Virus record (IMG/VR): IMGVR_UViG_3300045051_000720
Location: 1-64,000 of that record
Length of the DNA stretch: 64,000 bases
Strand: one strand, 5' to 3'
Shown here: positions 14,921-45,307 of the stretch, in pieces
Layout: every line of letters starts with the position of its first letter
Position numbering within the stretch: the first letter of the stretch is position 1
The notes under the pieces: model-generated
Seen by the model: the letters and a program-made list of their open reading frames with translations, nothing else
Database searches by the model: none
Told to the model about the DNA's origin: nothing
Program-made: the position numbers and the translations under genes

Positions 14921-15442
14921 ATGCCCACCTACTACTGCCCGTTCGACCGCTGTGGGGCGGCGATTCAGTACACCATCACGAAACCCACCACCTGCCCGCG
15001 CTGCGAGCGGCGATTTGCGGATGCGTTCAAGGTGGCTGTGGCTCAAACACCCCCGCCGCCCGCGCCTGTTGTCGAGGAAGACGATGAACCGCGCCTTACT
15101 CGCTCGGCACTGGAAGCGCGGCGTAAGTCGCTCTCTACAACCTCCGTCAAGCCCCGCACTCGGCGCGAGCGTGATGATACCGCGGCCAATGTGATGACGC
15201 CAGTGGGGAGCAAAGCCCATCCTGCGCTGCCCGATCCCGAGCCCGAATCCGATATAGAGGACGATACCTACGACCCACGCGAGGCGCGGCGGCTGGCGCG
15301 TGAACTGGCGGCGTCCATCGACCCATCTACGATCGTCGTCGAGGACCAAGACGACGGCATCGTCCGATTCAGCCAGTTCGTCGAAGAAGCCAAGCGCAAT
15401 GGGGGCAAAGCCCCCAGCACCAAGACCAAGCGCCGCCGCTGA
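14921..15442 (+). CDS. zinc-ribbon protein with disordered charged C-terminus
   Basis: CPFDRC...CPRC motif. Confidence 0.7.
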   Translation: MPTYYCPFDRCGAAIQYTITKPTTCPRCERRFADAFKVAVAQTPPPPAPVVEEDDEPRLTRSALEARRKSLSTTSVKPRTRRERDDTAANVMTPVGSKAHPALPDPEPESDIEDDTYDPREARRLARELAASIDPSTIVVEDQDDGIVRFSQFVEEAKRNGGKAPSTKTKRRR

Positions 15443-16179
15443 TGGATGCCACTACGGAGGGCACCGCAAAGCCCGCCTTCGAGCACGCCTATCCCGAGAT
15501 CAAGCGTATCGTAGAGACCCGTCGTGGCTCGTGGACCTATACGAGTCTGATGGAGTGGACTGACGTATCGGCCATTATCGTAGAGCGGGCATGGCGCAAG
15601 TGGGATACCTTCGAGCCCGCGAAGGGGCCGCTAGAGAATTGGCTCAATCGTTTGATTAGCCACGCGCTTATCAATCTACGCCGCGACCTACTCCTTAGGT
15701 GGAGTCGTCCGTGCATAGGTGGTTGGAACGCAAGGGGGAAGACGTGCTTTCACAACCTCGGCGGCGAGACGTGCGCTATCACCAAATCGCATAAACAATG
15801 TGCTGAATGCCCCATCTATGCTGATTGGCAAAAGGCGCGCGAACATCAGCTTCACATCAAATCCACCGTCGCCCTCGAACACCACGCGCAGGAGGCGCAC
15901 AACATCCAAGGAGACTTCACTGACGCCGCCGAGATCAAGGACAAACTCGACGCCGCGATGAAGGAGGAGCTAACCCCGGGCGAGTGGCGCGTCTGGTATT
16001 GTCTTTACGTCAAACACATGAAGCCGAGCGAGGCCAGCACACACCTCGAAGCCCTTGTCAAGACATGGAAGCGCCTGCCGCGACCTGATGAGATCTATGG
16101 CTATCAATCCATCCTTCAGACCTCGCGCCGCCTTAAGGAGATCGCGATGGAGTGGCTGCGCCGGGAGGACCATATATGA
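15442..16179 (+). CDS. phage sigma70-family (ECF-like) sigma factor with Cys-rich insert
   Basis: region-2-like WRKWDTFEPAKGPLENWLNRLISHALINLRR; region-4-like LTPGEWRVWYCLY; five-Cys insert between them. Confidence 0.7.
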   Translation: MDATTEGTAKPAFEHAYPEIKRIVETRRGSWTYTSLMEWTDVSAIIVERAWRKWDTFEPAKGPLENWLNRLISHALINLRRDLLLRWSRPCIGGWNARGKTCFHNLGGETCAITKSHKQCAECPIYADWQKAREHQLHIKSTVALEHHAQEAHNIQGDFTDAAEIKDKLDAAMKEELTPGEWRVWYCLYVKHMKPSEASTHLEALVKTWKRLPRPDEIYGYQSILQTSRRLKEIAMEWLRREDHI

Positions 16180-17458: not shown

Positions 17459-18429
17459 TCAAGTGTCTGATCGATGATTCGGAGCACCCCTCCTATGCCG
17501 CTCTCCACACCTATGTGTGGAGGACGTATCACATGGGCAAGGAGTCGTATTATCGCACCTATCTCCCGCGCCACGATCTGCTTACGGGACAACCCATTCC
17601 CTTCAAGGATGCCGAGCAGTATCTGGGCGCTGACTTCGCCAACCGCGTCAACCTGAAGAAATGGCTTGCCACTCAGCCGCGCGAGGTGGGGTTGGCGTGG
17701 GCCAAGGAGTGGTTGGCCAAGCGCAAGGTCTCCAAGGGTCTGATCTATGCCCCGTCGCAGGCCGAGTTGCGCACCCTATGCACGCCCACGATGCCCTATT
17801 ACGAGGCAGTGGCCGCGGACGAGGGGGGCTACTATGGAATCACCACCGCAATGGGATTCAAGCTGCGCTATGTAAAGGGTCTGGTGGGTCAGACGCTACC
17901 CGCCGGAGTGTCGGTCATACAAGACACTCGCGAGCAGGCTCCTGTCAAGCTGGACCTTCCAACCCGTATCGATACCCTAGATGTAGGCGACTATGCTCTT
18001 GCATCGCCACATGACCAAGGCGTCCGCATCGAGCGCAAGTCTCTCGGTGATTTTTGTGGCACGCTCAGCGCGCGCAAACAGGTGCGCGAAGGTAAGACCA
18101 AGACGACCGAGTGGACAGCCTACGAACGCTTTGACCGTGAACTCACGCGCGCCAGTGAGGCAGGTCTCTACGTTGTCATGATGGTCGAGGCCAATATCAA
18201 TGACGCCCAACGATTCGACTACCTTCCTCAGACCAAATGGGTGAAGGCCACGCCCGCGCACATCCTGCACAACCTGCGCACGCTGTTGACCAAGTATCCC
18301 CTCTCGTTTCAGGTCGTGTTCTGCGATGGGCGAAAGGAGCTGGCAGACAAGATGACGCGCGTGCTGGCGTTGGGCGCGGCGGTGAGGTCGTACGACCTTC
18401 AGTACCACCATGAGGAGGGTCTCCTGTGA
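17455..18429 (+). CDS. ERCC4/XPF-family nuclease
   Basis: QDTREQ, LDVGDY, IERKSLGDF motifs. Confidence 0.85.
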   Translation: MIKCLIDDSEHPSYAALHTYVWRTYHMGKESYYRTYLPRHDLLTGQPIPFKDAEQYLGADFANRVNLKKWLATQPREVGLAWAKEWLAKRKVSKGLIYAPSQAELRTLCTPTMPYYEAVAADEGGYYGITTAMGFKLRYVKGLVGQTLPAGVSVIQDTREQAPVKLDLPTRIDTLDVGDYALASPHDQGVRIERKSLGDFCGTLSARKQVREGKTKTTEWTAYERFDRELTRASEAGLYVVMMVEANINDAQRFDYLPQTKWVKATPAHILHNLRTLLTKYPLSFQVVFCDGRKELADKMTRVLALGAAVRSYDLQYHHEEGLL

Positions 18430-20405
18430 GCTGGAAGGGCAACGGAAACAACCCCCCGCCCGACCCGATCACGGACTGGAACGCCGAGTTCGAGTGCCTG
18501 CTTGACTACAACGAGCTGCCCGAGGACATGGCGCGCAAGACCCTTGGGCGCTTCCTGATGACCAATATCGGGATGCTAGTCGAGATCCTCACACGCAAGA
18601 TGCTGGAGCCTTACCAGCGCATCGTGCTGAAGGGTTGGCTGAACAAAAATTTCTCACTCACCATCGCGGGCCGTGCGTGGGGTAAGAGCACCGTTGCGTC
18701 GCATTTCTGCTATCTCTATTGCCTGCTCAACCCGGGCCACCATATCTTGATCTGCGCCGCGACCTTCAGGTCCAGCCGTCAGATTGTTGAACGCATCGAT
18801 GAATGGGCCAACGCCGCGGGTGGTGAGTTATTGCGTGAGACGCTCAAAGCAACCCCGACCGGTGGTACCATCATCAAGAAGCAGGACCTGTATCGCATCT
18901 GGTTCAAGAACGGTTCATCGGTCACAGCAGTACCTCTGGGCGATCCCGACAATCTGCGCGGCTTTCGGTGCAACGTACTGATGATCGACGAAGGCCTGCT
19001 CATCCCACAGCACACCATCAACATGGTGCTCAAGCCGTTCCTCGCAGGCGGCGCCGACGCGACCAAAAAGCAACGCATCCGCCGCCGCGAGGCGCGCCTC
19101 ATCGAGATGGGCAAGATGCAGGCCAAGGACAAGGTCAAGTTCAAGGCCGACAGCAAGATGATCATCATCTCGTCCGCCTCCTACCAGTGGGAGGAGCTAT
19201 ACAAAGACATCTACAAACCCTACCGCGCCATCATCGAGGCAACGGATGTCGAGCGTCCGCGCGCCGAGGAGAACGAGAAGGGGGCATCCAGTTACCTCGT
19301 CCATCAGCTCTCCTACAAGATGGTCAACCCCGACCTGATGGACACCAGCATCCTTGAGGAAATCCGCGAGAAGCGCATCCCCGAGAGCGTCATCAAGCGC
19401 GAATACGAGGCACAGTTTGTCAACGAGTCGGGAGGCTTCTTCAGCGCGCGCCAGATGGCAGATTGCACTATCCCACTTGGCCAGCGGCCTTGTATCGAAA
19501 TCGTGGGCGAGCGTAACGCCGAATACATCCTCGCCGTCGACCCGGCGGGTGGCAGCATCGGTAACGATGCGGCGGGTGACCATTTCGCGATGTGTGTCAT
19601 CAAGATCATCCAGCGCGCCAAGGATGGCAAGAAGATCGGGTTAGTGGTACACCAATACGCGTGCGCGGGCAAGGACATGAAGCACCACCTAGCTTACATG
19701 TACTACCTGCTCAAGCGGTTCAACGTGGTCTATGTCGTGATGGACTCAACCGGTGGCGAGAACATGAGCTTTTTGACGATGTGCAACGAAAGCGAGTACT
19801 TCAAATCGCGCAAGATGGAGTTGAAGGCTATCGAGGCGGACTTCGCCAAGGAAGGGTTTGACGACACCGTCGCCGCGGTGCGCCGCTCGTACAACGCCGA
19901 CAGCAGTTTGCGGCGCATCGTGCATAACCAGTATTTCTCCTCCAGCATCATCAAGGCCGGTAACGACCACCTACGCGCCTGTTTTGAGCAGAAGACCATC
20001 ATGTTCGCGTCCAAGGCAGCGTCAGTGGACGGCGCAGTGGCTCAGATGTGCCAATGTGATATACTCGACATTCACAAGACCCATCCCGAATACTATGATC
20101 CTGAGTTGGAGGGCAGCGCCTCCATGCACGAGTTCGTCATCTATCAGGATGCCATGATGGACCTCGTCAAGACCGAGTGTGCGCTGATCGAGGTGAAGGC
20201 GAGCCCGCTGGGGCATCTGACCTATGATTTGCCCCAGCACATGACGCGTAACCGGAAGGATGAGAGGCGCTCCAGAAAGGACTCATATTCAGCACTTTGG
20301 CTAGGTGTCTGGGGCCTTAAGATATATCTTGCTATGTTGGAGATGCCCCCGCCCGAGGATGACACCTTCGTCCCTGTAGCTATCCCGATGCCGGGGGTGG
20401 GATAA
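18426..20405 (+). CDS. terL: terminase large subunit
   Basis: Walker A AGRAWGKST, RGFRCN + Walker B LMIDEG, RNaseH-like ILAVDP and C-terminal KDSYSAL. Confidence 0.92.
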   Translation: MSWKGNGNNPPPDPITDWNAEFECLLDYNELPEDMARKTLGRFLMTNIGMLVEILTRKMLEPYQRIVLKGWLNKNFSLTIAGRAWGKSTVASHFCYLYCLLNPGHHILICAATFRSSRQIVERIDEWANAAGGELLRETLKATPTGGTIIKKQDLYRIWFKNGSSVTAVPLGDPDNLRGFRCNVLMIDEGLLIPQHTINMVLKPFLAGGADATKKQRIRRREARLIEMGKMQAKDKVKFKADSKMIIISSASYQWEELYKDIYKPYRAIIEATDVERPRAEENEKGASSYLVHQLSYKMVNPDLMDTSILEEIREKRIPESVIKREYEAQFVNESGGFFSARQMADCTIPLGQRPCIEIVGERNAEYILAVDPAGGSIGNDAAGDHFAMCVIKIIQRAKDGKKIGLVVHQYACAGKDMKHHLAYMYYLLKRFNVVYVVMDSTGGENMSFLTMCNESEYFKSRKMELKAIEADFAKEGFDDTVAAVRRSYNADSSLRRIVHNQYFSSSIIKAGNDHLRACFEQKTIMFASKAASVDGAVAQMCQCDILDIHKTHPEYYDPELEGSASMHEFVIYQDAMMDLVKTECALIEVKASPLGHLTYDLPQHMTRNRKDERRSRKDSYSALWLGVWGLKIYLAMLEMPPPEDDTFVPVAIPMPGVG

Positions 20406-20428: not shown

Positions 20429-21217
20429 GTGAGAATCAAAGTCATTTCTGTGCCAAATCAAACCACTTCTAAGCAATGCCCTAGATGTCAAATTGTAAAA
20501 GAGTTGACAGATTTTCGCGTTGACCGCTCGAAAATATCTGGATACGGATCACATTGTAAAGCATGTGAGGCGGCTCGACGACGCGAGTGGTATGCGTCTC
20601 ATCGTGAAGAAAGCGCGGCCAATCACGCCGATTGGGTAGACGAAAATCGAGAGTATCTAAATGCATATCGGCGCGCTAGACAGTCTAAGGACACAGAATT
20701 TGTTGGTAAAAATAAATCTCGCACTAGACAAACACACGAAGAATGTGTTGAGAAAAGAAAAAATCAAGCAAGGGCATATTATCGCCGTACAGCCGATCAA
20801 CAGAAGGCCTATCGAAAAGAATATAACGCCACGCATAAGAAAGAAAATGCGCAACGCAAGGCAAGACAAGAAAGAGAGCATATCAATTACAAAATAGCTA
20901 ACCGTCTTCGAGCGAGAACAAGACTAGCTTTACGCGCCCAATCTAGCCAGAAACAATATACTCTAAACGAATTTTTGGGTTGTACACCTGAATTTCTGCG
21001 ACACTGGATTGAACAGCAATTTCGTGATGGAATGACTTGGGATAATTGGGGGTTGGGGGATGGCAAGTGGCATATCGATCACATCCGTCCCTGCGCATCG
21101 TTTGACCTCACCGATCCCGAACAACAGAAGCAGTGTTTCCATTATACTAATCTCCGCCCACTCTGGGCGATAGAAAATCTATCCAAAGGTGGTAAACTAT
21201 GTCACGAAAATACGTAA
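20429..21217 (+). mobile_element. free-standing HNH homing endonuclease
   Basis: N-terminal CPRC...CKAC Zn motif, WHIDHIRPCASFDL...HYTNLRPLWAIENLSKG; AT-rich. Confidence 0.85.
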
Positions 21218-23238
21218 AAAAATCCGAATACTGGTCCCAACCTCGGAAGCCTATTATGGTTCCGGCTATAGCGGCCCCCAGCACACCATCTAATACGCAA
21301 GTACCATTTGGAGATGTAGAGGCGGCATTTGATGGCCACGCGCATTATTCCGCTACAGCCGCATGTGGAGGGGGTGATGTCATAAATACTTCCTATCGAG
21401 ATAGTGCGGCTCCGTCCGTATTAGATGTCAATCGTTACCGAAACATTAGACAAGGGATTGTGCCGATTTCAGAAATCGAAGGTAATTATTCAGTATTCGG
21501 GGCCATCGATCTTGTTTATAGAGCTTATTACAATTTCGCGCTTTTGCGAAACGCCATTTCGATGCTTACTGATTTCAGTTCAGGAAAGATCAATGTCAAG
21601 ACCTCTAATAAACGAGTAAAAACCTTCATTGAAACGTGGCTTGATGCTATTGGCATCAATGATCTTCAGCAGAAAGCTTTTCTTGAATACTATCGTTCGG
21701 GTAATGTCTGGTTTTACAAATTTAGCGGTAAAATTAGCGACGATGGGTTGAACATGCTTAGGCGTGCCTATGCTAAAGAAACGGTCAGAGGTCAACAAGC
21801 ATTTTCGAGTCGGCAGAGCAAGATTGTTCCCATTCGGTATATCATACTGAATCCAATGCAAGTCTATTTAATGCGTGGGGCGTCCTATACCTATGGCTAC
21901 GTGCGCATGCTATCGACCTACGAGATCGAGCGGCTCAAGAACCCCCAGACCGACGAAGACAAGCAGATCTTCGACTCGTTCCCAAAGGACATCCAGCGCC
22001 AGATCAAGCAAGGCGGCGCATGGAGGTACCTGTTCGTGCCACTCGACCAAAACCGGCTCTACTACGTGTTCTATCGCAAGACCGACTACGAGCCCCTTGC
22101 GGTACCGATGGCCTTTCCTCTGCTGAACGACATCGAGTTCAAGCTGGAGCTGCGACGCATCGACATGACGCTCGCGCGCACGATGGAGCAAGTCGTGTTG
22201 CTCGTCACGGCGGGACAGAAGGCCGATCAGTTCAATCAGGCCCCCGGCAACAAGCAGCTGGTTGCTCTCCAGAATATCTTCCAGAATCAAACCATCGGGC
22301 GGGTGCTGGTCGCCGACTACACGACCAAGCTGGAGTGGTGCATCCCCGATCTCAAGGAGCTGCTCGGTCCCGCCAAGTACGAGCGCGTCGACAAGGACAT
22401 CAAGGAGGGCCTCCAGTACATGTTTTTTGGCGAGGAGAAATTCGCCAACGCCGCCATCAAGATCCGCATCTTCATCGAGTCGCTCAAGGAGGGCCGTCGC
22501 GCCTTCTTAGAGGGATTCCTCATCCCCGAGGTCAAGAAAGTCTGCGAGCAGATGGGCTTCCGCGATGTTCCCACGCTGGAGTACGAGGACATCGTTCTCC
22601 AAGACGAGGCTCTGATGAACCGGCTGTATGTCCAGATGGGCCAGCTGGGTTTCCTCACCCCCGACGAGGTGTTTACGGCGGTCAAGACAGGGGATTTGCC
22701 GACGACGGAGGAGTCCCTAGACCATCAAGAAGCGCACAAGGCCGCGCGCAAGAAGGGGTTGTACGAACCCGTTGCGCCCGCACTAGCCGGCGGCAAGGGT
22801 CGTCCTGACGGCACTCCCGGTACACCTGCGACGCGCCATGTGTCCACCCCGATCGGCCAGACCAAGGCCAGCGAAGACATCGTGCGCGGCGATCATCACT
22901 TCGGCATGGTACGAATCGCCGAGAACCTCGTCGCGATGGACAAGGTACGCGCGGCAGTGGAGGCAACCCTCCTCAAGCAGCACAAGCTAGATGAGCTGAA
23001 CGATGCCCAGCAGATCGTCGCCGCGCAGGTGGCGCAGTCGATTTGCTTCAACGAGCCCGAGGGTCAGTGGCTGAAGGCGGTCAAGCGGTACGTCAAGGAG
23101 CCGCGAGACCCGCCCAAGACCGTGACCGACGAGATCGCCGAGATTCGTGCGGCGTATCACGAGGATGAACACCCGATCAGTCAGTGGCTTGGGGGGGTGT
23201 TGGTGCGCAGCAAGGTGGATTTCACGCCACGGGCGTGA
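21199..23238 (+). CDS. portal protein
   Basis: position between TerL and protease; EYYRSGNVWFY, DYEPLAVPMAFP, DYTTKLEW motifs; 679 aa. Confidence 0.8.
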   Translation: MSRKYVKKSEYWSQPRKPIMVPAIAAPSTPSNTQVPFGDVEAAFDGHAHYSATAACGGGDVINTSYRDSAAPSVLDVNRYRNIRQGIVPISEIEGNYSVFGAIDLVYRAYYNFALLRNAISMLTDFSSGKINVKTSNKRVKTFIETWLDAIGINDLQQKAFLEYYRSGNVWFYKFSGKISDDGLNMLRRAYAKETVRGQQAFSSRQSKIVPIRYIILNPMQVYLMRGASYTYGYVRMLSTYEIERLKNPQTDEDKQIFDSFPKDIQRQIKQGGAWRYLFVPLDQNRLYYVFYRKTDYEPLAVPMAFPLLNDIEFKLELRRIDMTLARTMEQVVLLVTAGQKADQFNQAPGNKQLVALQNIFQNQTIGRVLVADYTTKLEWCIPDLKELLGPAKYERVDKDIKEGLQYMFFGEEKFANAAIKIRIFIESLKEGRRAFLEGFLIPEVKKVCEQMGFRDVPTLEYEDIVLQDEALMNRLYVQMGQLGFLTPDEVFTAVKTGDLPTTEESLDHQEAHKAARKKGLYEPVAPALAGGKGRPDGTPGTPATRHVSTPIGQTKASEDIVRGDHHFGMVRIAENLVAMDKVRAAVEATLLKQHKLDELNDAQQIVAAQVAQSICFNEPEGQWLKAVKRYVKEPRDPPKTVTDEIAEIRAAYHEDEHPISQWLGGVLVRSKVDFTPRA

Positions 23239-23246
23239 GTGTATAG
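23239..23246 (+). promoter_or_regulatory. putative late promoter GTGTATAG
   Basis: 9 nt upstream of ATG 23256. Confidence 0.7.
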
Positions 23247-23255: not shown

Positions 23256-25775
23256 ATGGCCCCAACGCCCCGCCACAAGGCCCGCTTCGTAGCGACGGCC
23301 CATCTATACACGCCGCCTGCGAGTGAGCAGATGGAGGCCTGTGCGTCGCTGGACAAGCTGCGCGCGCTGTTGCCTTCGGACATCGATCCTTCTACGCGTC
23401 CCACCCTGCTGTTCGCTGCGGGCAATCTGGCAGTGGCAAATTTGGCCAACCTTAACGACGACGCCGTCACGCTCGAAGACACCTTGCGCACCTATCGCCA
23501 GTTCGAGTGGCAGCTAGTGGATGTGGAGCACAACCGTGGCACAGTCGTCGGGTTCATCGTCAAGGCCGGGCTGAGCGAGTTCGGCACCGATCGTCTGATC
23601 ACCGAGGACGAGGCCCGCGCCGCGGGCAAGCCAGTGAATGTCGCCATTGTTATTGCGCTATGGCGCGTAGTGGACCCCGAGCTGGCGAGCTGGCTGGAGC
23701 GCGCCGACGCTCCCGGCAGCCCCGACAAGGGTAAGCTCAGCCTTTCGTTCGAGGTCGGGTTTGACGACTACGACGTAGTCTTGCTGCCCAAAGACGCATC
23801 CAACTTAGCCCTCGCCACCGCGCGCATCACACCCGACTCGCCCGAGTTCGAGCACTACAGCAAGATGCTGCGCTGCTACGGTGGCAAAGGTGTGTACAAG
23901 GACCAGCGGGTCGCGCGCATCATCATGGGTAATATAGTACCGCTCGGCGCGGGCATCGTGACGGTTCCAGCGGCGGACGTGAAGGGTTTGACGACCATCA
24001 CGGAGAGCCCCCATGCAGCGGACCCAGCCGCGGCGGCGGTAGTGAATGTGAACGCCGAAACTGATGCGGGCCTGTATAAATACAGCTCCACCCAATGCAC
24101 CCTCGCCGAGGCTGACGCCGCGCCGTTCAAGGCGTTTGCAGCATCTATTCCTGACGAGCACGTGCATACAGACGAGAAGGACTCGACGTTGGGACGGGAG
24201 ATGTCCACGCACTGCACCGTCCTCTACGGTATCAAAACCGCCGATGCCGAGGCCATCAAAACCATCCTCGCGGGATTCGGCCCCATCAAGATGACGCTGG
24301 GCAAGGTGTCCATGTTCGAGCGGGACGCCTACGATGTGCTCAAAGTGGACGTGGACAGCCCCGACCTGCACCGCGCGCACGCGCTCATCAAGACGGCCAC
24401 GGAGACCGAGACCAAGTGGCCGACCTATTCGCCGCACGCAACGATTGCCTATATGCGCAAGGGTCACGCGCGCGGCTACGTAGGCGACAGCCGCTTTGAG
24501 GGGATGTCGTTCACGTTCAACAGCGTCACGTTTTCTCCTCACACTGGCGACCGTGTCGAGATCCCTCTTGTACAAACCACCACCGCGGCGGTGTATATAG
24601 ACAACGACATGGCCACCCCCTCCCGTTTGATCAAGCTCCCCCAAGGCTGGCAGGAGCGTCTCAATTCCATTGCCAACTGGTCCGCCTCACCAGAGGGCGT
24701 GGTCACCGCTGCGAGTCTTCCGCATGGCGTGACGATTACCCTCTCCGATGGCCGCAAGATCGTTGCTAAAGTCGTTGATGGTCAGACACTTGAGGCAGCG
24801 ACGGAGGTCTCGATGGCCGGAGTGGTCATCACCGACATGACGCCGGGTGTGGGTCCGCAAGCCGACGATCCTGCTAACGAGCATCCCGCCAAGGCCAATG
24901 TCTATCCCACCAAGACGCCCGAGAAGGTTGCCGCAGAACAGGCCGAGCTGGAGAAGCAGCGCGCGGGTCAACAGGCGGGGTATAGCGGAGCCTCGGTTGC
25001 CCAAGTCACTAGCCTTCTTCAGTCGGTCGCTGTTAGCACCGCAGATCTCGCTGATGCTGTCTCTCGCATAAACACTGCCTCCGCAAGTGTATCATCCATC
25101 ACGACCCCATCTTCCCCCATGAACCTCTCTGATCTCAAGCAATCCCTCGCCAGCGTCAAGACTATCGAAGAGCTGCCCACCGTCGTTGCCAACGTTGGCC
25201 TGTTCGCCGACGAGATTGCCAAGGCCAGCGAGAAAATCGCCGCCGAGCGCAAGGCTGCCGTTGAAGCACAAGCCGCCGCCGAGAAGACCCTCGCCGAGGT
25301 CAAGGCCCAGCTCGACCAGATCTCCAAGGCTCACAATGACATGGTCGCCGCACAACAGGCCGCCGCCGCTGAGGCTGCGTTCCAAGCGCGCATGACCGCC
25401 GTGGCCGATACGTTCGACCTTGACGACGAAGTGCGCGCCGATGTGACCGAAGAGGTCAAGGCGTGTGCTGACGATGCTGCGTTCGCCAAGTGGATGACCA
25501 AGGCGAAGAAGACGATGAAGGGCTGGCTCAAGGCCGCGAAGCCGGCGAAAAAGGACGATGACGGCGACGATGATGACGCGCAGGCCAAGGCCGCCGCGAA
25601 AACGGCCCTTGCTTCCGCCAAAGCCAACATCGTCGATCCCAACATTCCGAATACGCTTGAGGTCAACGCCAAGACGCTGCGTGAGCAGTACGCGGAGACC
25701 TTCGCCAAGGGTATCCGCATCGGCGGCGAGAGTGTCGCTGACATCACCGCGCGTGCCAAGCCCGCGAAGAAATAA
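23256..25775 (+). CDS. prohead protease - 2H phosphoesterase - scaffold polyprotein
   Basis: HK97/herpes-type protease motifs (VEH, SLSFEV, GAGIVTVPA); HCT and HAT 2H motifs; acidic Ala-rich coiled-coil C-terminus; located between portal and MCP. Confidence 0.8.
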   Translation: MAPTPRHKARFVATAHLYTPPASEQMEACASLDKLRALLPSDIDPSTRPTLLFAAGNLAVANLANLNDDAVTLEDTLRTYRQFEWQLVDVEHNRGTVVGFIVKAGLSEFGTDRLITEDEARAAGKPVNVAIVIALWRVVDPELASWLERADAPGSPDKGKLSLSFEVGFDDYDVVLLPKDASNLALATARITPDSPEFEHYSKMLRCYGGKGVYKDQRVARIIMGNIVPLGAGIVTVPAADVKGLTTITESPHAADPAAAAVVNVNAETDAGLYKYSSTQCTLAEADAAPFKAFAASIPDEHVHTDEKDSTLGREMSTHCTVLYGIKTADAEAIKTILAGFGPIKMTLGKVSMFERDAYDVLKVDVDSPDLHRAHALIKTATETETKWPTYSPHATIAYMRKGHARGYVGDSRFEGMSFTFNSVTFSPHTGDRVEIPLVQTTTAAVYIDNDMATPSRLIKLPQGWQERLNSIANWSASPEGVVTAASLPHGVTITLSDGRKIVAKVVDGQTLEAATEVSMAGVVITDMTPGVGPQADDPANEHPAKANVYPTKTPEKVAAEQAELEKQRAGQQAGYSGASVAQVTSLLQSVAVSTADLADAVSRINTASASVSSITTPSSPMNLSDLKQSLASVKTIEELPTVVANVGLFADEIAKASEKIAAERKAAVEAQAAAEKTLAEVKAQLDQISKAHNDMVAAQQAAAAEAAFQARMTAVADTFDLDDEVRADVTEEVKACADDAAFAKWMTKAKKTMKGWLKAAKPAKKDDDGDDDDAQAKAAAKTALASAKANIVDPNIPNTLEVNAKTLREQYAETFAKGIRIGGESVADITARAKPAKK
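24591..24598 (+). promoter_or_regulatory. internal late-promoter motif GTGTATAT before in-frame ATG 24609
   Basis: GC-rich upstream flank and spacing match the intergenic copies. Confidence 0.45.
25119..25775 (+). CDS. putative nested in-frame scaffold protein (MNLSDLKQ...)
   Basis: GTGTATC at 25087, C-rich leader TCTTCCCCC-ATG, in frame with the protease; coiled-coil domain starts here. Confidence 0.5.
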   Translation: MNLSDLKQSLASVKTIEELPTVVANVGLFADEIAKASEKIAAERKAAVEAQAAAEKTLAEVKAQLDQISKAHNDMVAAQQAAAAEAAFQARMTAVADTFDLDDEVRADVTEEVKACADDAAFAKWMTKAKKTMKGWLKAAKPAKKDDDGDDDDAQAKAAAKTALASAKANIVDPNIPNTLEVNAKTLREQYAETFAKGIRIGGESVADITARAKPAKK

Positions 25776-27713: not shown

Positions 27714-27748
27714 TTCATCTCCTACCCTCAAGAGCCTATTTGTTTCTC

Positions 27749-28726
27749 ATGATAACCACCCCATGGACCTCTCAAGAAGACGCTATCCTGCGTGAACGCT
27801 TTGCTTCGTGTTCTAGCATCGAAGAAGTGGTGCCTTATTTACCCGGACGCACCTATAACGCGATACGCACACGCGCTAACGCATATCTTGGTGTCAAAAT
27901 AAAAAAACTTCCCGTCCACGATACCCACTGTTTTGACGTGCCCGATGAGATCAACTGTTCGTGGGCGGGTTATCTGGCAGCAGACGGATGTGTATCTGAC
28001 AAAGGCCGCTTAACGTTAGGTATTGCGAGTAAAGACCGTGCTCATATTGAAGCGTTAGTACTGTATATGGGATTCACAGGGCGGATTTGGGACTATACCA
28101 AATCCTATACCGACCTCAAGGTGAAAAAATACGGCAAGGTCAGTACCTACTCGGGTACTTGCCATATCTCCACCCTTCAAATCCAATGTCCAGCCGTCTG
28201 TGTACAACTAGCTAGACACTGGAACATCACGCCTCGCAAAACGCGCACTCTGCAACCTCCTAATCTGACTGATGACCGCCTTATCATGGCTTACCTCTCG
28301 GGTTTTATTGACGGCGATGGATGGATTATCGAGGACAAAAGCACAAAGCACCCCCAGTACAGCATTGCCGTCATGGGTACTAAGGAGATGATGGAATGGA
28401 CCAAGGCTGTATTTGATCGTCTGACGCCTTACCTTATCACTGCTAAGCTACAGCCCACTGAATCGGACAACATATACGATTACAAGGTCAGCGGGGTCAA
28501 GGCTTTCTGGTTGGCTAAATTATTTTTGACGCTGGATATTCCTCGTCTTGACCGGAAATGGGACAAAATGCGACGATTGATTGCGGAGGTAGAGGCAGGC
28601 ACTCCGTCCCAACGTTTTTTAACCACTATGGTAAATGGTCGCCCTAGCGATACCATCCTTACGCAGTTCGGACTCCTTGATTACGCAAATGCCTTATGCA
28701 CAACGGTTAGACCAAGTGTAGCATAA
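27749..28726 (+). mobile_element. free-standing double-motif LAGLIDADG homing endonuclease
   Basis: WAGYLAADGC and YLSGFIDGDG motifs; AT-richer than flanks. Confidence 0.85.
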
Positions 28727-31227: not shown

Positions 31228-34200
31228 TTAGGGGTTCGGGATAGTACCCTGACGAGAGCCATCAACATAGACCTCAACGTTAGCACCATTCCAGTTAAGC
31301 GAAATGTTATTAGAGCCTGTATACTGAATCCCATTACCTTTTACCTGAAAGGGGACCTGAAAAGTTGCTTTACCGTCAAAATTAGATGTAGTGTCTACAT
31401 CAAGGATATCGCAGTTGATGGAGCCATTCTGGCCGTTTAACGTAATAGTGCCGGCCGCCGATTCGTTAGATAATAATAGAACCCCGGGAAATTGTCCACC
31501 AATGTTCTGTGCTCCTAGGGCGACTACTAAATTATTAGACGTATTAAATGAGCGAAATAGTTTATTTCCGGCTGCCCCTAGGAACATTTCCAATCGCTCT
31601 CCAGCAGGATCTCCTACTAACGCCCCTTGAGTATTTAATACTGCGAGTGAAGATCCGGCTCCTCCAGTAAAAGCCCCACGCGCCGAGACGTTGTTAAACT
31701 CTGCATCGCCGTTTGCTCTAATTCTCCATCCCGCGCTGCCCGCGCTGAATGTACTACTTTCAAGATCGAGATTGCCAAACACAGCAGTTCCGTACGACTG
31801 GAATGAATTGACCGTCGCTTTCATGGACGCGATCTTGCCATCTGCTCCAATCTCAAATCCCCATCGCGCCTGAGCCGCACCACCAATTCCATTCACGCTA
31901 CCGGTCACTGCCGCGTCCATGTAAAGACGGGCAGTGGCATTATTACCTGTAGTGACGGTGCTGAGCTGGGTCAGATAGGCCGCATAAGCACCTCCTGACG
32001 CTGCCAATGCATCCATGATGGTACCCGCCAGCGCGTAGTTAATCGCGCCAGTTGTCACTAGCCGCGCGCTGACCGCATTGATCTGCGTAGACTGTGCGCC
32101 GCTTGCGTTGACAACAGCTGTCTGGATGGATGCATTAAGTGCAGTGCTGATCGCACCCACTCCAGTGATCGATCCACTCAGACCAATCACTGTAGTGAGA
32201 AGCGTAGATCCAGTCTGATAGAGCGCGGTTTGAAACAGGTTGAGGTCACCCGTTAGGAGGTTAAACGCGCCCGACAGCCGATCACTGATGTCATAGAAGA
32301 ACGTCCCGAACAATTGTTCGGCATTACCCGAGATGGGACCATAGATCGGAGCATTGTAATCACCGTTAGCCGCGAGCGATCCGCTATAGCCAAACGTATC
32401 GACCAGCGAGAACCACGTGTAGAAAGACCCTACCTGTGGCGCAATGTTGGCGTTTCCCGCTAGATTAGTCGAGGTGAAGTTGACATTATCGTAGGTTGGC
32501 GTGAACGATGGACTGGCATTGCACCACAGATAGATCCCACTGATATCACTCTGGGGGCGTGGTGTGATGTTGTACACAACACCGCCGTTATACCCCACGA
32601 ATCCGCTGTTCAAAGGCGGTGGAGGCTGGGGGTTGTTGACCGCAAGTCGCGCGCCTGATACCACGTTGTTAAACTCATCTACCGAATCTACCGCGAAGGT
32701 AAACCCGCGCAGGGGTTTCACGGTCGTGCCGGTGAACAGATACTGAGGATCGATATTCCACGTCGTGTTGCTCCCGCCGCTGATCGAGATGTCGGTGGAC
32801 GACAGAATCGTGCTTTCGGCGCCCAGCTTGAGCAGTCGCGCCCGGTATCCCGTTACGAACTGTGCGGTCGGCGTTTCGTTATCATTCGAATCAAGGTTAA
32901 CATGCCAGCCAAACGATGGCGAGCGGCCCATATAACCCGTGTAGCGCGCATCGCTCGGGCGAATGTAGTACATGTCTTCATTGGCCGCGATGAACACACC
33001 AGACAGTGCTGCGGTCGTACCCAACGGATTTGTGGACGCGTTGGTATAGAGGATACGGCAGAACGGAGACTGATATCCATTGGCGTTGTTAGCCGCTACT
33101 GAGAAGGTATAAACGCCGTATCGATCGGGGGTGTAGTTGATTCCTGTCGTCTGTGGTTGACCAATCAGGAAGGGTGTACCCCCAAACGACCCTGACTGGG
33201 TATAGTAGGCCACATTGGACGATGTGGACCCCGACCACGACAGGTAGAGATACGAGTAAAAGCTGTTATCCACTTCCAACCCCGTCACGCGCGTCGCGAC
33301 CAATCCGGTTGGCGGAGCGGGTGGGGTAGTATCGCCCGCGACTGGGGGATTAGTCACCACCGAGTAGTTGTTGTTGACGAGGTAGTTGACACCAGTGTTA
33401 TATTTGACCCCGAGGATCTCGATTGTCCCCTGCCGCGGCTCGGAGGTCGCCAAACATTTGTATTGCGTGGCTTGGTCAAACACCGTGACCGATGTACCAC
33501 TGGCGGTCAGAGTCCACGTCGATCCTTTGAACAGCGCGCTAGAGAAGCCGCTATTCAGCGTCAGCAATGTCGTACTGTTGGTCGGGGCGGTAGTGACCGT
33601 GCGCGTCTCGATCTGAGAGTTGCGAATCAGTCCCACCTGATTGGACCCCGTGATTCCGGTCGCATCCACCGTCGCGGGCACGATGGCGGCCATGAAATAG
33701 GTGAAACCGTTGGTGAGCTTGACGGATTTGTCCAGCGTGATCGCCTCTCGGCCCGTGCTGAAGTCCATGATCTTACCGCCCTGCTGCTGGTTGTTGCGGT
33801 AGTTGTCGTAGACGTTGAACACGTCACCCGGACGCAGGTATAATCCCTCCACATCGGTCGCGAAAGCAATGGTCTCCGTCAACAGCTGTTCAACCGTCAA
33901 TATCCAGTTGGCCGCACGGATGGCTTGCCCGCGTGAGGTGGTCGCGAAGGCAGTGATCTGCTTCTCGACATAACCGAATCGGGCGATGCCTTGGGTGTCT
34001 TCGACGCGCTCAGGGGTCGTACGAAACAGATTGTCTGGGTCCGTCCATTTGACTACGCACACTGTCGAACGCGTGTTGCGCGGCGTGTCCGAGTACGTAA
34101 ACGCACCGTTGACGACGTTGGCGTTGGAGAAATTGAACACCGGGTCGCGCAACTCGCTACCTACCGGGAAGATTCGCCCATTGGCGTAGTACAACATGCC

Positions 34201-35397: not shown

Positions 35398-35400
35398 GGT

Positions 35401-36111
35401 CTAGGCGGGATTGAGGTTGGGATCAGGTTGGTATTGACTACCACCACCCGGCAATGGAGTCGTCGTTACGCCACCAGTGGTACCGGCCTCGCTGGTGCTC
35501 ACATCATTGTTCGTGGTCGTCATGCAGACGGGAATGGGCGACACCAACGCGCGGCCATAGACGAGGGGCACGCAGCCGCCCTGAGTAACCGCCCCGGCGG
35601 TACCGGGAAAGGCGGTGGACTGAGCCTGATCGGGGTTCGCGCTGGCTCCTTGCGGGGTAGGAGTCAGCATTTGGGTGATGCCACCAAGGACCAGCGAAAT
35701 ACCAAACCCCGCGATGACCGTAGTCGCGGCAGTGAATCCAGCCGTGCCGACGAAGCTCCATGTGTACGGCAACAGACCGGGGTTGATGAATGACAACGCG
35801 ATCAACGCAACGCCCGCGATGACCTTGGCCGCACCACTATTACGCCCGCGAATCGTGGGCATGAAGAAGATGGTCGAGAGGCCCGACCGGTGCGTCCCCT
35901 CGCTGGGGTCAATCACATTGGACCGTTTTTGGAGAGCGATACGATACAGCTTGTCGCGCGCGGGGCCTGTCAAGTAGCGCGTCAACGCGCCACGGGTATT
36001 GATGTCAATCGCGCGCAACGCTTCGGCAGGCGACCGCACATCAAGCTGCCATTCGGATTGGCCAATGGCCTTGCCAAGAGACCCGACGAGATGAATGGTG
36101 GTCAGTTGCAT
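35401..36111 (-). CDS. lambda gpI-like tail assembly protein
   Basis: IHLVGSLG...SPAEALRAI, QGGCVPLVYG. Confidence 0.85.
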   Translation of the reverse strand: MQLTTIHLVGSLGKAIGQSEWQLDVRSPAEALRAIDINTRGALTRYLTGPARDKLYRIALQKRSNVIDPSEGTHRSGLSTIFFMPTIRGRNSGAAKVIAGVALIALSFINPGLLPYTWSFVGTAGFTAATTVIAGFGISLVLGGITQMLTPTPQGASANPDQAQSTAFPGTAGAVTQGGCVPLVYGRALVSPIPVCMTTTNNDVSTSEAGTTGGVTTTPLPGGGSQYQPDPNLNPA

Positions 36112-36815
36112 TGGTAACGGAGAACCCCAACGAGCCGACGCAGCCACGCGCCGTCGATTGGATCGATGGACGAGAGGTGATGACGGCGGTGATGGAGCAT
36201 TTGGTTAGGCCCGGTCACGACCGCGAGGTGGTGGGGGTAAGCGGACCCATAGGTGCGGAACAACAGCACGTCATCCGTGACAATAGGCTGGTCTTTGGGG
36301 ACGTAGACAAAGCCCTCGTCGGCGATGTGGCGCGTGATGGCTGACTCCTCGGCGTGCTCGAAGGACTCGTCACGATCGTAGTCGGTGAGGTAGATCCCAT
36401 GGGTTTGGCGGTAGTGAAGACGAATCGTTTCGTAGCAATCCCACTGTCCCCAGATCCAGACGAGTCCCGTGGGCTCTACGCGGTATGTCTCGGGCACATA
36501 GGTAGCCCATTTGCCCGACGCCGCGCACAGATGGAGTGGCAAACACATCTCGCGCGCGGTCTCAAGGTCTGCCTCACTGAACCCCTCGTTGGTATGGCTC
36601 GATCCGCCATGGTAGATGGCGCAAACTCGCCCGAGGCCCGCGGCAGTGGCGTAATCCGATGGGTCAATCTCGAAGGAGTCGTGGGGTTCTGGACTGACAT
36701 TGCGGCATGGGAAGGCGTGAACCGAAGACTCGGTGTGATAAACCAGCCCACACACTTCCTCGCCCGGCATGGCGTGGGTGTGAGCGACAATATCGGCTTT
36801 GACGCGCGTGTTCAT
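36102..36815 (-). CDS. lambda gpK-like protein (JAB-like + NlpC/P60)
   Basis: EEVCGL, WGQWDCY, PHHLAV motifs; ATGA overlap with gpL stop. Confidence 0.85.
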   Translation of the reverse strand: MNTRVKADIVAHTHAMPGEEVCGLVYHTESSVHAFPCRNVSPEPHDSFEIDPSDYATAAGLGRVCAIYHGGSSHTNEGFSEADLETAREMCLPLHLCAASGKWATYVPETYRVEPTGLVWIWGQWDCYETIRLHYRQTHGIYLTDYDRDESFEHAEESAITRHIADEGFVYVPKDQPIVTDDVLLFRTYGSAYPHHLAVVTGPNQMLHHRRHHLSSIDPIDGAWLRRLVGVLRYQCN

Positions 36816-38549: not shown

Positions 38550-38586
38550 GACCTTGGACCTAGACTGAACCGGAACCTACCCTATC

Positions 38587-38594
38587 CTATACAC
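38587..38594 (-). promoter_or_regulatory. putative late promoter GTGTATAG
   Basis: recurrent motif upstream of GIY-YIG/L-K-I-J. Confidence 0.65.
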
Positions 38595-38600
38595 CCACCG

Positions 38601-44293: not shown

Positions 44294-44330
44294 GACCTTG
44301 GACGGCGACTGACGCCTTAAACCTGCCTAG

Positions 44331-44338
44331 CTATACAC
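44331..44338 (-). promoter_or_regulatory. putative late promoter GTGTATAG
   Basis: upstream of TMP. Confidence 0.7.
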
Positions 44339-44346
44339 CCCGCCGA

Positions 44347-45306: not shown

Positions 45307-45307
45307 G

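What the first reader, a model, noticed from the sequence alone, without database searches (positions are those of the whole stretch)
23256..25775. Acb1-like 2H phosphoesterase built into the prohead protease-scaffold polyprotein
Seen: between the protease domain and the scaffold coiled coil lies a ~165-aa domain (24075-24570) with intact paired motifs GREMSTHCTVLYG (HCT at 24210) and YSPHATIAYMRKG (HAT at 24435) and the linker FERDAYDVLKVDVDSPDL. Known: paired HxT motifs define 2H phosphoesterases; T4 gp57B/Acb1 is a member that destroys CBASS cyclic-nucleotide signals, and the prohead protease has been reported as an activator of some type I CBASS systems. Inference: a trigger-antidote fusion that makes a signal-degrading enzyme at the same time, place and stoichiometry as the immune-activating protease; proteolytic maturation could free the domain or leave it packaged for delivery at the next infection.
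Basis: partly seen in the sequence, partly recalled or inferred. Interest (0 to 1): 0.85.

Follow-up and report, generated by a model that had tools for sequence, protein, structure and literature searches.

The report
Acb1-like enzyme inside head-protease gene
A 219-kb soil phage has an Acb1-related enzyme, of the type that destroys bacterial alarm nucleotides, built into the protein that carries its head-maturation protease into the empty capsid; it is probably packaged with the protease, but its activity is untested.

Summary
ORF 23256-25775 (839 aa) is intact. Both HxT motifs lie exactly where stated and are invariant in 23 of 23 relatives.

- **Protease domain (aa ~27-250).** It has no Pfam hit, but a confident model matches only herpesvirus assemblins and phage prohead proteases. 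H92 and S164 are invariant.
- **2H domain (aa 277-437).** Its best structural match is Acb1. An Acb1-family profile aligns at 93% probability, against 1.7% for E. coli ThpR. It is still a separate clade, whose nearest relatives sit in giant "polyvalent" injected proteins and in portal or MuF fusions.
- **New finding: the gene looks nested.** The phage's promoter-like motif GTGTATA (20 copies against 2.65 expected) recurs twice inside the ORF. Each copy precedes a conserved in-frame Met (M452, M622), and both are conserved at nucleotide level in 9 of 9 relatives, in two reading frames. So scaffold-only products are probably made separately, and the 2H domain travels only with the protease.
- **Best reading.** The enzyme is carried into the procapsid by the scaffold tail. 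It is then freed by maturation cleavage and probably ejected into the next host to degrade nucleotide immune signals.

The "trigger-antidote" idea remains possible but is untested. This is a new variant of known kinds.

The parts
23239..23245 (+). Promoter-like motif GTGTATA, 10 nt upstream of the gene's ATG
   Evidence: The same motif lies upstream of the orthologous gene in 9 of 9 loci. It occurs 20 times in the window against 2.65 expected.
23256..25775 (+). Full-length ORF of 839 aa: protease, 2H, beta-domain, scaffold-like region
   Evidence: It is conserved full-length in relatives. It lies between the portal-position gene (21199-23238) and the 199-aa and 391-aa head genes.
23334..24005 (+). 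Prohead (capsid maturation) protease domain of the assemblin/HK97-gp4 fold, aa ~27-250. Invariant H92 is at 23529-23531 and S164 at 23745-23747.
   Evidence: Model pLDDT 87.8. All top 50 PDB hits are herpesvirus assemblins. There are 87 BFVD hits, including annotated prohead proteases. Invariant residues are listed.
24084..24566 (+). 2H phosphoesterase domain, aa 277-437, Acb1-related. The HxT motifs are at 24210-24218 (H319-C-T321) and 24435-24443 (H394-A-T396).
24591..24597 (+). Internal promoter-like motif GTGTATA (codons V446-Y447-I448)
   Evidence: The exact 7-mer is conserved in 8 of 8 beta-domain-bearing loci despite 38-65% aa identity and GC of 52-62%.
24609..24611 (+). Conserved in-frame ATG (M452): predicted start of a nested 388-aa beta-domain plus scaffold product
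   Evidence: The Met is conserved in an otherwise variable linker. It is the first ATG after the motif in every locus, 5-41 nt downstream.
24618..24845 (+). Small beta-rich domain (aa ~455-530, LSDGR...VVITDMTP) of unknown role. It is present in two of the three architectures.
   Evidence: There was no informative match.
24897..24992 (+). Linker with protein-level conserved motifs N-V-Y-P-T (aa 548-552) and A-G-Y-S-G-A (574-579): candidate protease recognition or cleavage motifs
   Evidence: These motifs are conserved in the family but use varied synonymous codons, unlike the two promoter-like sites. Cleavage itself has not been shown.
25087..25093 (+). Second internal motif GTGTATC, read in another frame (AGT-GTA-TCA = S-V612-S613)
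   Evidence: GTGTAT(C/T) is conserved in 9 of 9 loci, which explains the odd [S/G/R/C]-V-S residue pattern as NGT-GTA-TCN.
25119..25121 (+). Near-invariant in-frame ATG (M622): predicted start of a nested 218-aa scaffold-only product
   Evidence: M622 is conserved in at least 90% of 33 sequences, including the shortest architecture. It lies 25-52 nt downstream of the motif in 9 of 9 loci.
25119..25772 (+). C-terminal scaffold-like region (aa 622-839), rich in Ala, Lys, Asp and Glu and present in all architectures
   Evidence: Atlas leads point to Mu gpI-like (PF10123) and phage scaffold clusters, and are leads only. The assignment rests mainly on gene position and analogy.

Best explanation
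The gene is a nested head-assembly gene. Its full-length product uses its C-terminal scaffold region to co-assemble into the procapsid. It thereby carries in two enzymes in 1:1 ratio: the maturation protease (assemblin/HK97-gp4 fold, H92/S164) and an Acb1-related 2H phosphodiesterase (H319xT, H394xT).

Two internal copies of the phage's own promoter-like motif, each followed by a conserved in-frame ATG (M452, M622), probably give separate and more abundant beta-scaffold and scaffold-only proteins. This is the arrangement of herpesvirus UL26/UL26.5, lambda C/Nu3 and Mu I/Z.

After shell assembly the protease cuts the linkers and the scaffold leaves. The freed ~20-kDa 2H enzyme stays in the head like a T4 internal protein and is ejected with the DNA into the next cell. 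There it hydrolyses host nucleotide immune messengers (CBASS-type cyclic di- or trinucleotides, possibly cyclic oligoadenylates or 2'-5'-linked signals) by metal-independent 2H chemistry. Because the same polypeptide is also in the cytoplasm late in infection, it may act there too.

What is shown: the domain identities, the intact catalytic motifs, conservation of the fusion, nucleotide-level conservation of the internal motifs, and the domain's kinship to 2H domains of head-borne and polyvalent proteins. What is inferred: internal transcription and translation, proteolytic release, retention and ejection, and the substrate.
For: - **Enzyme identity.** The 2H domain is real and intact. The catalytic tetrad is invariant in 23 of 23 relatives. 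The domain is as conserved as the scaffold, at 50% against 48% mean pairwise identity, while linkers are at 34%.
- **Evolutionary retention.** It is retained across a deep clade with one inferred loss.
- **Closest characterised enzymes.** The top Foldseek hits are viral immune-evasion phosphodiesterases: Acb1 7T26, the penguinpox cGAMP PDE 9CIW, and a phage BCSR5 PDE. hhalign to an Acb1 family profile gives 93% probability and E=2.5e-7.
- **Closest relatives overall.** They lie inside 2,000-6,000-aa proteins carrying LPD38 and SNF2 helicase domains, i.e. polyvalent injected proteins.
- **Fusions to other head proteins.** 2H or Acb1 domains are fused to a Mu-type portal plus ADP-ribosyltransferase, to MuF, and, as a bona fide Acb1 domain of 148 bits, to the portal of Pseudomonas phage psageK9.
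- **Prior prediction.** PMC5512222 predicted that such 2H domains are virion-delivered and degrade defence nucleotides, and noted that they never pair with RNA ligases.
- **Protease fold.**
- **Nested starts.**
- **Modular insert position.** The three architectures differ only by inserts upstream of the internal motifs.
Against: - There is no activity, proteomic or transcript evidence of any kind.
- No RNA run holds this phage.
- Acb1 membership is borderline by Pfam. TM-scores are higher to plant and bacterial CPDases (0.61-0.65) than to Acb1 (0.44/0.57). The fold is known to be retargeted to different substrates (PMC11410667).
- Cleavage sites are unknown.
- In the window the first internal motif lacks the flanking GG..GC of the consensus. 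The second is GTGTATC, a variant not otherwise seen upstream of genes here.
- Retention in the mature head and ejection rest purely on analogy.
- The host and its defence systems are unknown.
Confidence: 0.5

Rival explanations
1. Trigger-antidote in cis. The selected function is late and cytoplasmic. The prohead protease trips protease-sensing CBASS CD-NTases, and the covalently linked 2H enzyme destroys the resulting cyclic nucleotides at the same time, place and dose. This is not exclusive of packaging.
For: Prohead proteases activate CD-NTases by cleaving an activation loop, and T4 needs Acb1/Acb2 to mask this (10.64898/2026.03.04.709575; 10.1101/2023.05.21.541620). The 2H domain sits only in the protease-bearing product, upstream of the first internal start, so it is exactly 1:1 with the protease. 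Acb1 is the nearest characterised relative.
Against: The same type of enzyme is fused to portal and MuF proteins and to polyvalent injected proteins, none of which is a protease. The common denominator is the capsid interior and delivery. A catalytic enzyme gains little from 1:1 stoichiometry. Relatives with the same protease live without the insert, and no separate 2H gene lies within 10 kb of theirs. Whether this protease is sensed by any CBASS is unknown.
Confidence: 0.25
2. RNA-directed role. The domain acts on RNA rather than on signalling nucleotides. It might be a 2',3'-cyclic phosphodiesterase that heals tRNA or mRNA cut by host anticodon nucleases or toxins, or a Usb1-like RNase effector against host RNA.
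For: The strongest Pfam match is the general 2'-5' RNA ligase superfamily model (PF13563, 41 bits). TM-scores are highest to CPDases. 7 of 23 members also touch LigT_PEase. PMC5512222 lists a Usb1-like RNase role as one option.
Against: TIGR02258 (ThpR) scores 17 bits against a cut-off of 65.7. hhalign to E. coli ThpR gives 1.7% probability, against 44% for T4 Acb1 in a like-for-like single-sequence test. No RNA ligase or polynucleotide kinase is present in the 64-kb window. This 2H clade is reported never to associate with RNA ligases.
Confidence: 0.15
3. The internal GTGTAT motifs are not promoters but conserved module-boundary or regulatory DNA, such as recombination joints for swapping cargo inserts or binding sites for a late regulator. 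In that case the gene makes only the full-length protein, which is a true polyprotein.
For: Both optional inserts (2H, DUF6582) lie immediately upstream of a motif copy. The second site is a GTGTATC variant not used upstream of other genes. No transcript data exist.
Against: 16 of 20 GTGTATA copies precede an ORF start within 60 nt, against a background of 35%. Each internal copy is followed by a conserved in-frame Met that is the first ATG downstream in every locus. The phage encodes its own sigma factor. Nested scaffold genes are the rule for protease-scaffold fusions (general knowledge: HSV UL26/UL26.5, lambda C/Nu3, Mu I/Z).
Confidence: 0.25
4. The fusion is an assembly or annotation artefact, or the 2H domain is a decayed structural spacer.
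For: None beyond the fact that the window is a metagenomic contig.
Against: More than 30 independent assemblies show the same in-frame architecture. A second assembler's contig is identical over the stretch. The catalytic tetrad is invariant and the domain is under constraint equal to the scaffold's.
Confidence: 0.02

Closest known systems
Acb1 (T4 gp57B; Erwinia phage FBB1 Acb1, PDB 7T26/7T27)
   Same: Both have the 2H fold and the HxT/HxT catalytic tetrad. Acb1 is the best Foldseek hit, and the profile-profile match over the whole core has 93% probability. The aromatic positions equivalent to Acb1 W74 and F107 are kept, as an invariant Phe and a mostly aromatic residue. Both are phage proteins.
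   Different: This is a separate clade. The Pfam Acb1 score is at the threshold, and T4 Acb1 alone aligns at only E=2e-4. It is a domain inside an 839-aa late structural protein, not a free ~150-aa protein. The N-terminal Tyr and C-terminal lid Trp of Acb1 could not be aligned. Its activity is unknown.
2H domains of polyvalent proteins and of MuF/portal fusions (Iyer et al. 2017, PMC5512222)
   Same: These are the true nearest relatives, at E of 1e-45 to 1e-66. They sit in LPD38/SNF2-bearing giant proteins and in portal+ADPRT and MuF fusions. They were predicted to be delivered with the DNA and to degrade defence nucleotides.
   Different: The carrier here is the protease-scaffold protein. None of the fusions described in the passages of that paper I read, or recovered here, has that carrier. 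The domain is internal, flanked by linkers, rather than terminal.
Portal-Acb1 fusion of Pseudomonas phage psageK9 gp70 (NC_074661.1, annotated hypothetical)
   Same: A head-incorporated structural protein carries a signal-degrading 2H enzyme. In this case it is a bona fide Acb1 domain (PF23474, 148 bits).
   Different: The carrier is different: the portal, with 12 copies per head and a C-terminal fusion. The 2H clade is different too. No protease is involved.
Nested protease/scaffold genes: herpesvirus UL26/UL26.5, lambda C/Nu3, Mu I/Z (general knowledge)
   Same: All have an N-terminal assemblin-fold protease and a C-terminal scaffold region, plus an in-frame internal start with its own promoter that gives a scaffold-only product. 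The protease is carried into the procapsid by the shared C-terminus.
   Different: An extra enzyme (2H) and a beta-domain are inserted between protease and scaffold, and two nested starts are predicted rather than one. Expression is unverified.
T4 internal proteins (IPI*, Alt) targeted to the prohead and trimmed by gp21 (general knowledge; PMC5512222 introduction)
   Same: Anti-defence or host-modifying proteins are loaded into the prohead, processed by the prohead protease and injected with the DNA.
   Different: T4 uses a short capsid-targeting peptide on separate genes. Here the targeting would be by covalent fusion to the scaffold.

Membership tests
2H phosphoesterase superfamily | Two H-x-T/S motifs | tested here: met
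   H319-C-T321 and H394-A-T396 are present and invariant in 23 of 23 relatives.
2H phosphoesterase superfamily | 2H fold and a family-model score above threshold | tested here: met
   The pLDDT 91 model matches only 2H enzymes at probability 1.00. PF13563 scores 41 bits against a gathering score of 27.
Acb1 (PF23474; Hobbs et al. 2022) | Score above the curated family threshold | tested here: inconclusive
   The excised domain scores 27.9-28.1 bits against a gathering score of 27. Within the full protein it scores 24.7 bits, which is below. 20 of 23 relatives match at E<=0.01.
Acb1 (PF23474; Hobbs et al. 2022) | Closer to Acb1 than to other 2H clades | tested here: met
   Acb1 is the Foldseek top hit at E=2e-5. 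hhalign to T4 Acb1 gives 44%, against 1.7% for E. coli ThpR, and an Acb1 family profile gives 93%. However, TM-scores are higher to CPDases, and the real nearest kin are polyvalent-protein 2H domains.
Acb1 (PF23474; Hobbs et al. 2022) | Base-stacking aromatics Y12, W74, F107, W147 and the C-terminal lid (PMC9117128) | tested here: inconclusive
   The W74 equivalent is an invariant Phe, and the F107 equivalent is Trp or another aromatic in most members. Y12 and the lid Trp fall outside the alignable core.
Acb1 (PF23474; Hobbs et al. 2022) | Hydrolysis of 3'3'-cGAMP and other CBASS signals; rescue from CBASS | not testable with these tools
   This needs biochemistry and phage genetics.
ThpR/LigT RNA 2',3'-cyclic phosphodiesterase | Equivalog model score and profile similarity | tested here: not met
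   TIGR02258 scores 17 bits against a cut-off of 65.7. hhalign to E. coli ThpR gives 1.7% probability.
Polyvalent-protein-type 2H domain (Iyer et al. 2017) | Nearest relatives embedded in LPD-bearing giant proteins or fused to MuF or portal; no RNA-ligase partner | tested here: met
   There is no RNA ligase in the window, but only 64 of 219 kb were seen.
Prohead (capsid maturation) serine protease, assemblin/HK97-gp4 fold | Fold | tested here: met
   All top 50 PDB hits are herpesvirus assemblins, at probability up to 0.99 although TM is only 0.27-0.37. There are 87 BFVD hits at E<=1e-3, including annotated prohead proteases, with TM 0.4-0.5.
Prohead (capsid maturation) serine protease, assemblin/HK97-gp4 fold | Conserved His and Ser nucleophile pair; sequence-family membership (S77/S78/S80) | tested here: inconclusive
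   H92 and S164 are invariant and 72 residues apart. For comparison, the HCMV assemblin pair H63/S132 (recalled from general knowledge, not checked here) is 69 residues apart. No Pfam, PHROG or NCBIfam protease model matches. A catalytic role is inferred.
Prohead (capsid maturation) serine protease, assemblin/HK97-gp4 fold | Gene position between portal and major capsid protein | tested here: met
   The order TerL, portal-size gene, this gene, a 199-aa gene, then the 391-aa MCP (phrog_2522) is seen in the window and in relatives.
Nested protease/scaffold gene (UL26/UL26.5, C/Nu3, I/Z type) | In-frame internal start with its own promoter upstream of the scaffold part | tested here: met
   This was tested computationally only. 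The motif is 7.5-fold enriched and tied to gene starts. The two internal copies and their Mets are conserved at nucleotide level in 9 of 9 loci, with protein-level motifs as a contrast.
Nested protease/scaffold gene (UL26/UL26.5, C/Nu3, I/Z type) | Separate shorter products actually made | not testable with these tools
   No RNA run holds the phage. A single 174-nt RNA-library contig at 25120-25293 proves nothing.

The most novel reading that the evidence does not exclude
A phage lineage has physically coupled the very enzyme that trips protease-sensing CBASS (its prohead protease) to an Acb1-type signal-destroying phosphodiesterase, in one polypeptide expressed 1:1. Scaffold is made separately from nested promoters. 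On this reading the fusion is a self-masking 'trigger plus antidote' that is also loaded into the capsid for the next infection. This would be a counter-defence strategy not yet described, in a gene organised like herpesvirus UL26/UL26.5.
Probability: 0.2. Interest if true: 0.85.

Novelty: new variant of a known kind. Interest (0 to 1): 0.62.

Why it matters
If the domain degrades immune nucleotides, this family shows a third structural route, after portal and MuF fusions, by which phages put an anti-signalling enzyme inside the capsid. It is also the first route in which the carrier is the prohead protease. That protease was recently shown to be what many CBASS systems sense, so the idea that phages mask their own trigger becomes directly testable.

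The 2H clade involved is very large: 5,678 cluster representatives at E<=1e-3, mostly inside polyvalent proteins. It is uncharacterised, so one assay would annotate thousands of proteins.

The nested promoter arrangement adds a phage parallel to herpesvirus UL26/UL26.5. It also gives a defined promoter motif (GG-GTGTATA-GC) for an uncultured jumbo-phage group that has its own sigma factor.

Tried and rejected
- **Sequence models for the protease.** Pfam, PHROGs and NCBIfam found nothing for the N-terminal, beta and C-terminal parts. Only structure search resolved the protease.
- **PDB sequence search.** It gave only a marginal Acb1 hit at E=0.6.
- **Cultured-phage search.** It found only isolated 2H domains at 28-39% identity and no full-length relative.
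- **GTDB genome scan.** It found no relative, so there is no host clue.
- **BCSR5 phosphodiesterase (PDB 9Q2Y).** No paper could be found.
- **'VY' and 'VS' linker motifs as cleavage sites.** I first read them this way, then rejected it because the conservation is at nucleotide level, in two reading frames, and matches the promoter motif.
- **Shine-Dalgarno sequences.** None was seen upstream of M452 or M622, or clearly upstream of the gene's own start, so SD presence is not informative here.
- **Antisense GTGTATA at 23305-23311.** It is not conserved in relatives and was dropped.
- **RNA evidence.** No RNA run holds this phage. Laying relatives' runs gave scraps only.
- **Atlas searches.** Those for the beta-domain and scaffold gave leads only.


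Full report
**1.

The window is positions 1-64000 of a 219,464-bp viral contig, IMGVR_UViG_3300045051_000720, from a rhizosphere metagenome. ORF 23256-25775 (+) is one open frame of 839 aa.

The excised middle part matches several family models:
- PF13563 (2'-5' RNA ligase superfamily): E=3e-10, 41 bits.
- PF23474 (Acb1): E=2e-6, 27.9 bits against a curated cut-off of 27. Within the full protein it scores 24.7 bits.
- phrog_755: E=2e-10.

The fusion is not an artefact. A search of 5.8 billion proteins returned 35 full-length relatives at 40-78% identity from NCBI, JGI, ENA and Logan assemblies. A Logan contig of 19.8 kb covers the stretch with no differences, although it may come from the source sample.

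**2. Anatomy**

An alignment of 33 relatives and a domain table show a modular protein with three architectures:
- protease, 2H, beta-domain, C-terminal region (the majority);
- protease, beta-domain, C-terminal region (P0038, P0039, P0040, P0044);
- protease, C-terminal region (P0047-P0053).

A further optional insert, DUF6582 (PF20223), follows the beta-domain in four proteins.

Mean pairwise identity among 20 full-length members is 59% for the protease, 50% for 2H, 49% for the beta-domain and 48% for the scaffold region, against 34-35% for linkers.

A tree on the shared parts places the 2H-less "beta-only" forms inside the 2H-bearing clade, next to P0035/P0036, with 98/99 support. The simplest history is one gain and one loss, though the root is by midpoint only. 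No other 2H domain lies in the window, or within 10 kb of the gene in relatives that lack the insert.

**3. The N-terminal domain is a prohead protease by fold**

It has no Pfam, PHROG or NCBIfam hit. An AlphaFold model built on 29 sequences is confident (pLDDT 87.8).
- Against the PDB, all top 50 matches are herpesvirus assemblins (HCMV, KSHV, EBV, HSV, PRV, VZV). Probability reaches 0.99 but TM is only 0.27-0.37.
- Against BFVD there are 87 matches at E<=1e-3. They include proteins annotated as prohead or capsid maturation protease, and jumbo-phage proteins such as phage G gp19, PaBG and phiRSL1, with TM 0.4-0.5.

H92 and S164 are invariant. Their 72-residue spacing resembles the His-Ser spacing of assemblin (69 residues for the HCMV H63/S132 pair, recalled from general knowledge rather than checked here). 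A catalytic role is inferred.

The gene order is TerL (18426-20405, Terminase_6N), a portal-size gene (21199-23238), this gene, a 199-aa gene, then a 391-aa major head protein (phrog_2522). This order is kept in relatives.

The C-terminal 218 residues are rich in Ala, Lys, Asp and Glu. They give only weak leads to Mu gpI-like and phage scaffold clusters. "Scaffold" therefore rests mainly on position and analogy.

**4. What kind of 2H enzyme it is**

The model of the domain (pLDDT 91.2, structured over aa 277-437) matches only 2H enzymes. In order of E-value:

| Match | PDB | E-value |
|---|---|---|
| Acb1 of phage FBB1 | 7T26 | 2e-5 |
| Penguinpox cGAMP phosphodiesterase | 9CIW | 5e-5 |
| Burkholderia phage BCSR5 phosphodiesterase | 9Q2Y | 8e-5 |
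| Deinococcus CPDase | 5H7E | 3e-4 |
| E. coli LigT | 5LDM | 2e-3 |

AKAP18, coronavirus ns2 and rotavirus VP3 follow. The spread is small, and TM-scores are actually higher to CPDases (0.61-0.65) than to Acb1 (0.44/0.57).

Profile comparisons give a clearer ranking:
- Against single sequences, the family profile aligns to T4 Acb1 at 44% probability (E=2e-4) and to E. coli ThpR at 1.7% (E=0.03).
- Against a six-member Acb1 family profile it aligns from the first HxT to the second at 93% probability, E=2.5e-7.
- ThpR's equivalog model scores 17 bits against a cut-off of 65.7.
- All 23 family members hit PF13563, 20 hit Acb1 and 7 hit LigT_PEase.

Of the four base-stacking aromatics described for Acb1 (PMC9117128), two fall in the alignable core. 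Both are aromatic here: an invariant Phe for W74, and mostly Trp for F107.

So Acb1 is the nearest characterised relative, but the domain is not a member of Acb1 proper.

**5. Its true kin**

A profile search of 1.84 billion cluster representatives found 5,678 hits at E<=1e-3 and 1,404 at E<=1e-30. Beyond the orthologues, the best hits (E of 1e-45 to 1e-66) are mostly domains inside proteins of 2,000-6,000 aa.

Two of these were scanned. They carry LPD38 ("large polyvalent protein associated domain") and SNF2/Strawberry-notch helicase modules. These are the polyvalent proteins that Iyer et al. (PMC5512222) argue are delivered with invading DNA.

Other relatives are Mu-portal + 2H + SAP + ADP-ribosyltransferase (P0054) and 2H + MuF (P0056).

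While assembling Acb1 sequences I found that Pseudomonas phage psageK9 gp70, annotated as hypothetical, is a portal protein (PF06381, 299 bits) with a bona fide C-terminal Acb1 domain (PF23474, 148 bits).

Iyer et al. noted that this type of 2H domain never associates with RNA ligases. They proposed that it degrades nucleotides made by nucleotide-activated defences, or acts as an RNase. The window has no RNA ligase or polynucleotide kinase.

**6. The gene looks nested**

Two short residue motifs ("VY" and "[S/G/R/C]-V-S") and two Met residues (M452, M622) are conserved inside otherwise variable linkers. The DNA explains them.

- GTGTATA lies 10 nt upstream of the gene's ATG (23239-23245).
- It lies again at 24591-24597, 11 nt upstream of the ATG for M452.
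- GTGTATC lies at 25087-25093, 25 nt upstream of the ATG for M622.

GTGTATA occurs 20 times in the window against 2.65 expected, and 0 of 100 shuffles reach 20. In 16 of 20 cases an ORF of at least 90 aa starts within 60 nt, against a background of 35%. The extended consensus is GG-GTGTATA-GC. A cluster of motif-to-ATG spacings at 10-13 nt suggests near-leaderless transcripts (inference). The phage encodes a sigma-70-family protein (15442-16179).

Nine loci were compared, spanning 38-100% protein identity and 45-62% GC:
- The motif precedes the gene in all nine.
- The exact 7-mer precedes the beta-domain Met in all eight loci that have that domain.
- GTGTAT(C/T) precedes the scaffold Met in all nine.
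- That Met is always the first ATG downstream of the motif.

The second site is read in a different frame (NGT-GTA-TCN), which accounts for the odd residue pattern. As a control, two other conserved linker motifs (VYPT and AYTDA-like) use varied synonymous codons, so they are protein-level features.

I therefore read the two internal sites as promoters with in-frame starts, giving 388-aa and 218-aa products. This is the logic of herpesvirus UL26/UL26.5, lambda C/Nu3 and Mu I/Z (general knowledge). No transcript data exist for this phage, so this remains a prediction.

The consequence is that the 2H domain belongs only to the protease-bearing product.

**7. Mechanism proposed**

- Shown: domain identities, intact catalytic residues, long-term retention, kinship, and the nucleotide-level signals.
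- Inferred: the C-terminal region co-assembles the full-length protein into the procapsid; the protease then cuts the linkers (the VYPT and AYTDA-like motifs are candidates); the 2H enzyme is freed and either retained and ejected with the DNA or acts late in the cytoplasm; its substrates are nucleotide immune messengers.

The recurrent fusion of 2H/Acb1 enzymes to portal, MuF, polyvalent and now protease-scaffold proteins points to the capsid interior, and so to delivery, as the common theme.

It has gained context from the demonstration that prohead proteases activate CD-NTases by cleaving an activation loop (bioRxiv 10.64898/2026.03.04.709575; 10.1101/2023.05.21.541620). It is not specifically supported, however.

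Substrate cannot be read from the fold, since LigT-like phosphodiesterases have been retargeted repeatedly (PMC11410667).

**8. Novelty and verdict**

Head-protein-2H fusions and their predicted anti-signalling role were described in 2017, and Acb1 was described in 2022. What is new:
- the carrier, a prohead protease-scaffold protein;
- the nested expression signals that tie the enzyme to the protease alone;
- the size of the uncharacterised clade.

I found no paper describing this arrangement.

Verdict: a real feature and a new variant of known kinds. Interest is moderately high, and the key functional claims await simple biochemistry.

Noticed in passing
L036:5322-7124 (Pseudomonas phage psageK9, NC_074661.1 41321-43123): gp70, annotated as hypothetical, is a portal protein (PF06381, 299 bits) with a bona fide C-terminal Acb1 domain (PF23474, 148 bits). 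It is a portal-Acb1 fusion in a cultured phage.
   Followed up: partly
window, both strands: e.g. 20421, 23239, 25804, 29327 (+); 62658, 52885, 51726, 50830, 49778, 44338, 38594 (-): The promoter-like consensus GG-GTGTATA-GC lies upstream of many genes, with 20 copies against 2.65 expected. A phage sigma-70-family gene lies at 15442-16179. Motif-to-ATG spacings of 10-13 nt suggest leaderless transcripts.
   Followed up: partly
window 20429-21217, 27740-28726, 37716-38549, 47364-48524: Four homing-endonuclease-like genes interrupt the structural module. One is a zinc-ribbon/HNH-like gene between TerL and portal that is absent in relative L021. Two are LAGLIDADG and one is GIY-YIG.
   Followed up: no
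P0006, P0008, P0027, P0043 (relatives; alignment A1 columns ~855-950): A second optional insert, DUF6582 (PF20223), sits after the beta-domain and just upstream of the second internal motif. Its function is unknown.
   Followed up: no
BFVD entries A0A6J5RFH1, A0A6J5N5R9: Proteins with a prohead-protease fold are fused to Dps/ferritin domains. These are other examples of cargo welded to the head protease.
   Followed up: no
window 25120-25293: A wastewater metatranscriptome library (X4) holds one 174-nt contig at 98% identity. It covers only the scaffold part and begins 1 nt after the A of the M622 ATG. It is a single low-depth contig, and DNA carry-over is not excluded, so it is not evidence of a transcript start.
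   Followed up: no
window 23305-23311 (- strand): An antisense GTGTATA copy lies inside the 5' end of the gene. It is not conserved in relatives and is probably chance.
   Followed up: yes
window 31228-46605 (- strand): A lambda-like siphovirus tail module (1,647-aa tape measure; tail L, M and J homologues; NlpC/P60-JAB) sits in a 219-kb genome. C5 DNA methylase homologues lie at 54829-56538 (strong hit) and 6264-7214 (weak hit, below the Pfam cut-off), and a RecT/PDDEXK pair at 3570-5140, where the RecT hit is also below the cut-off.
   Followed up: no
L001:3592-4411 (phage T4): T4 acb1 (57B) lies immediately next to ipI, the gene for an internal head protein that is injected to block restriction. 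This may be coincidence.
   Followed up: no
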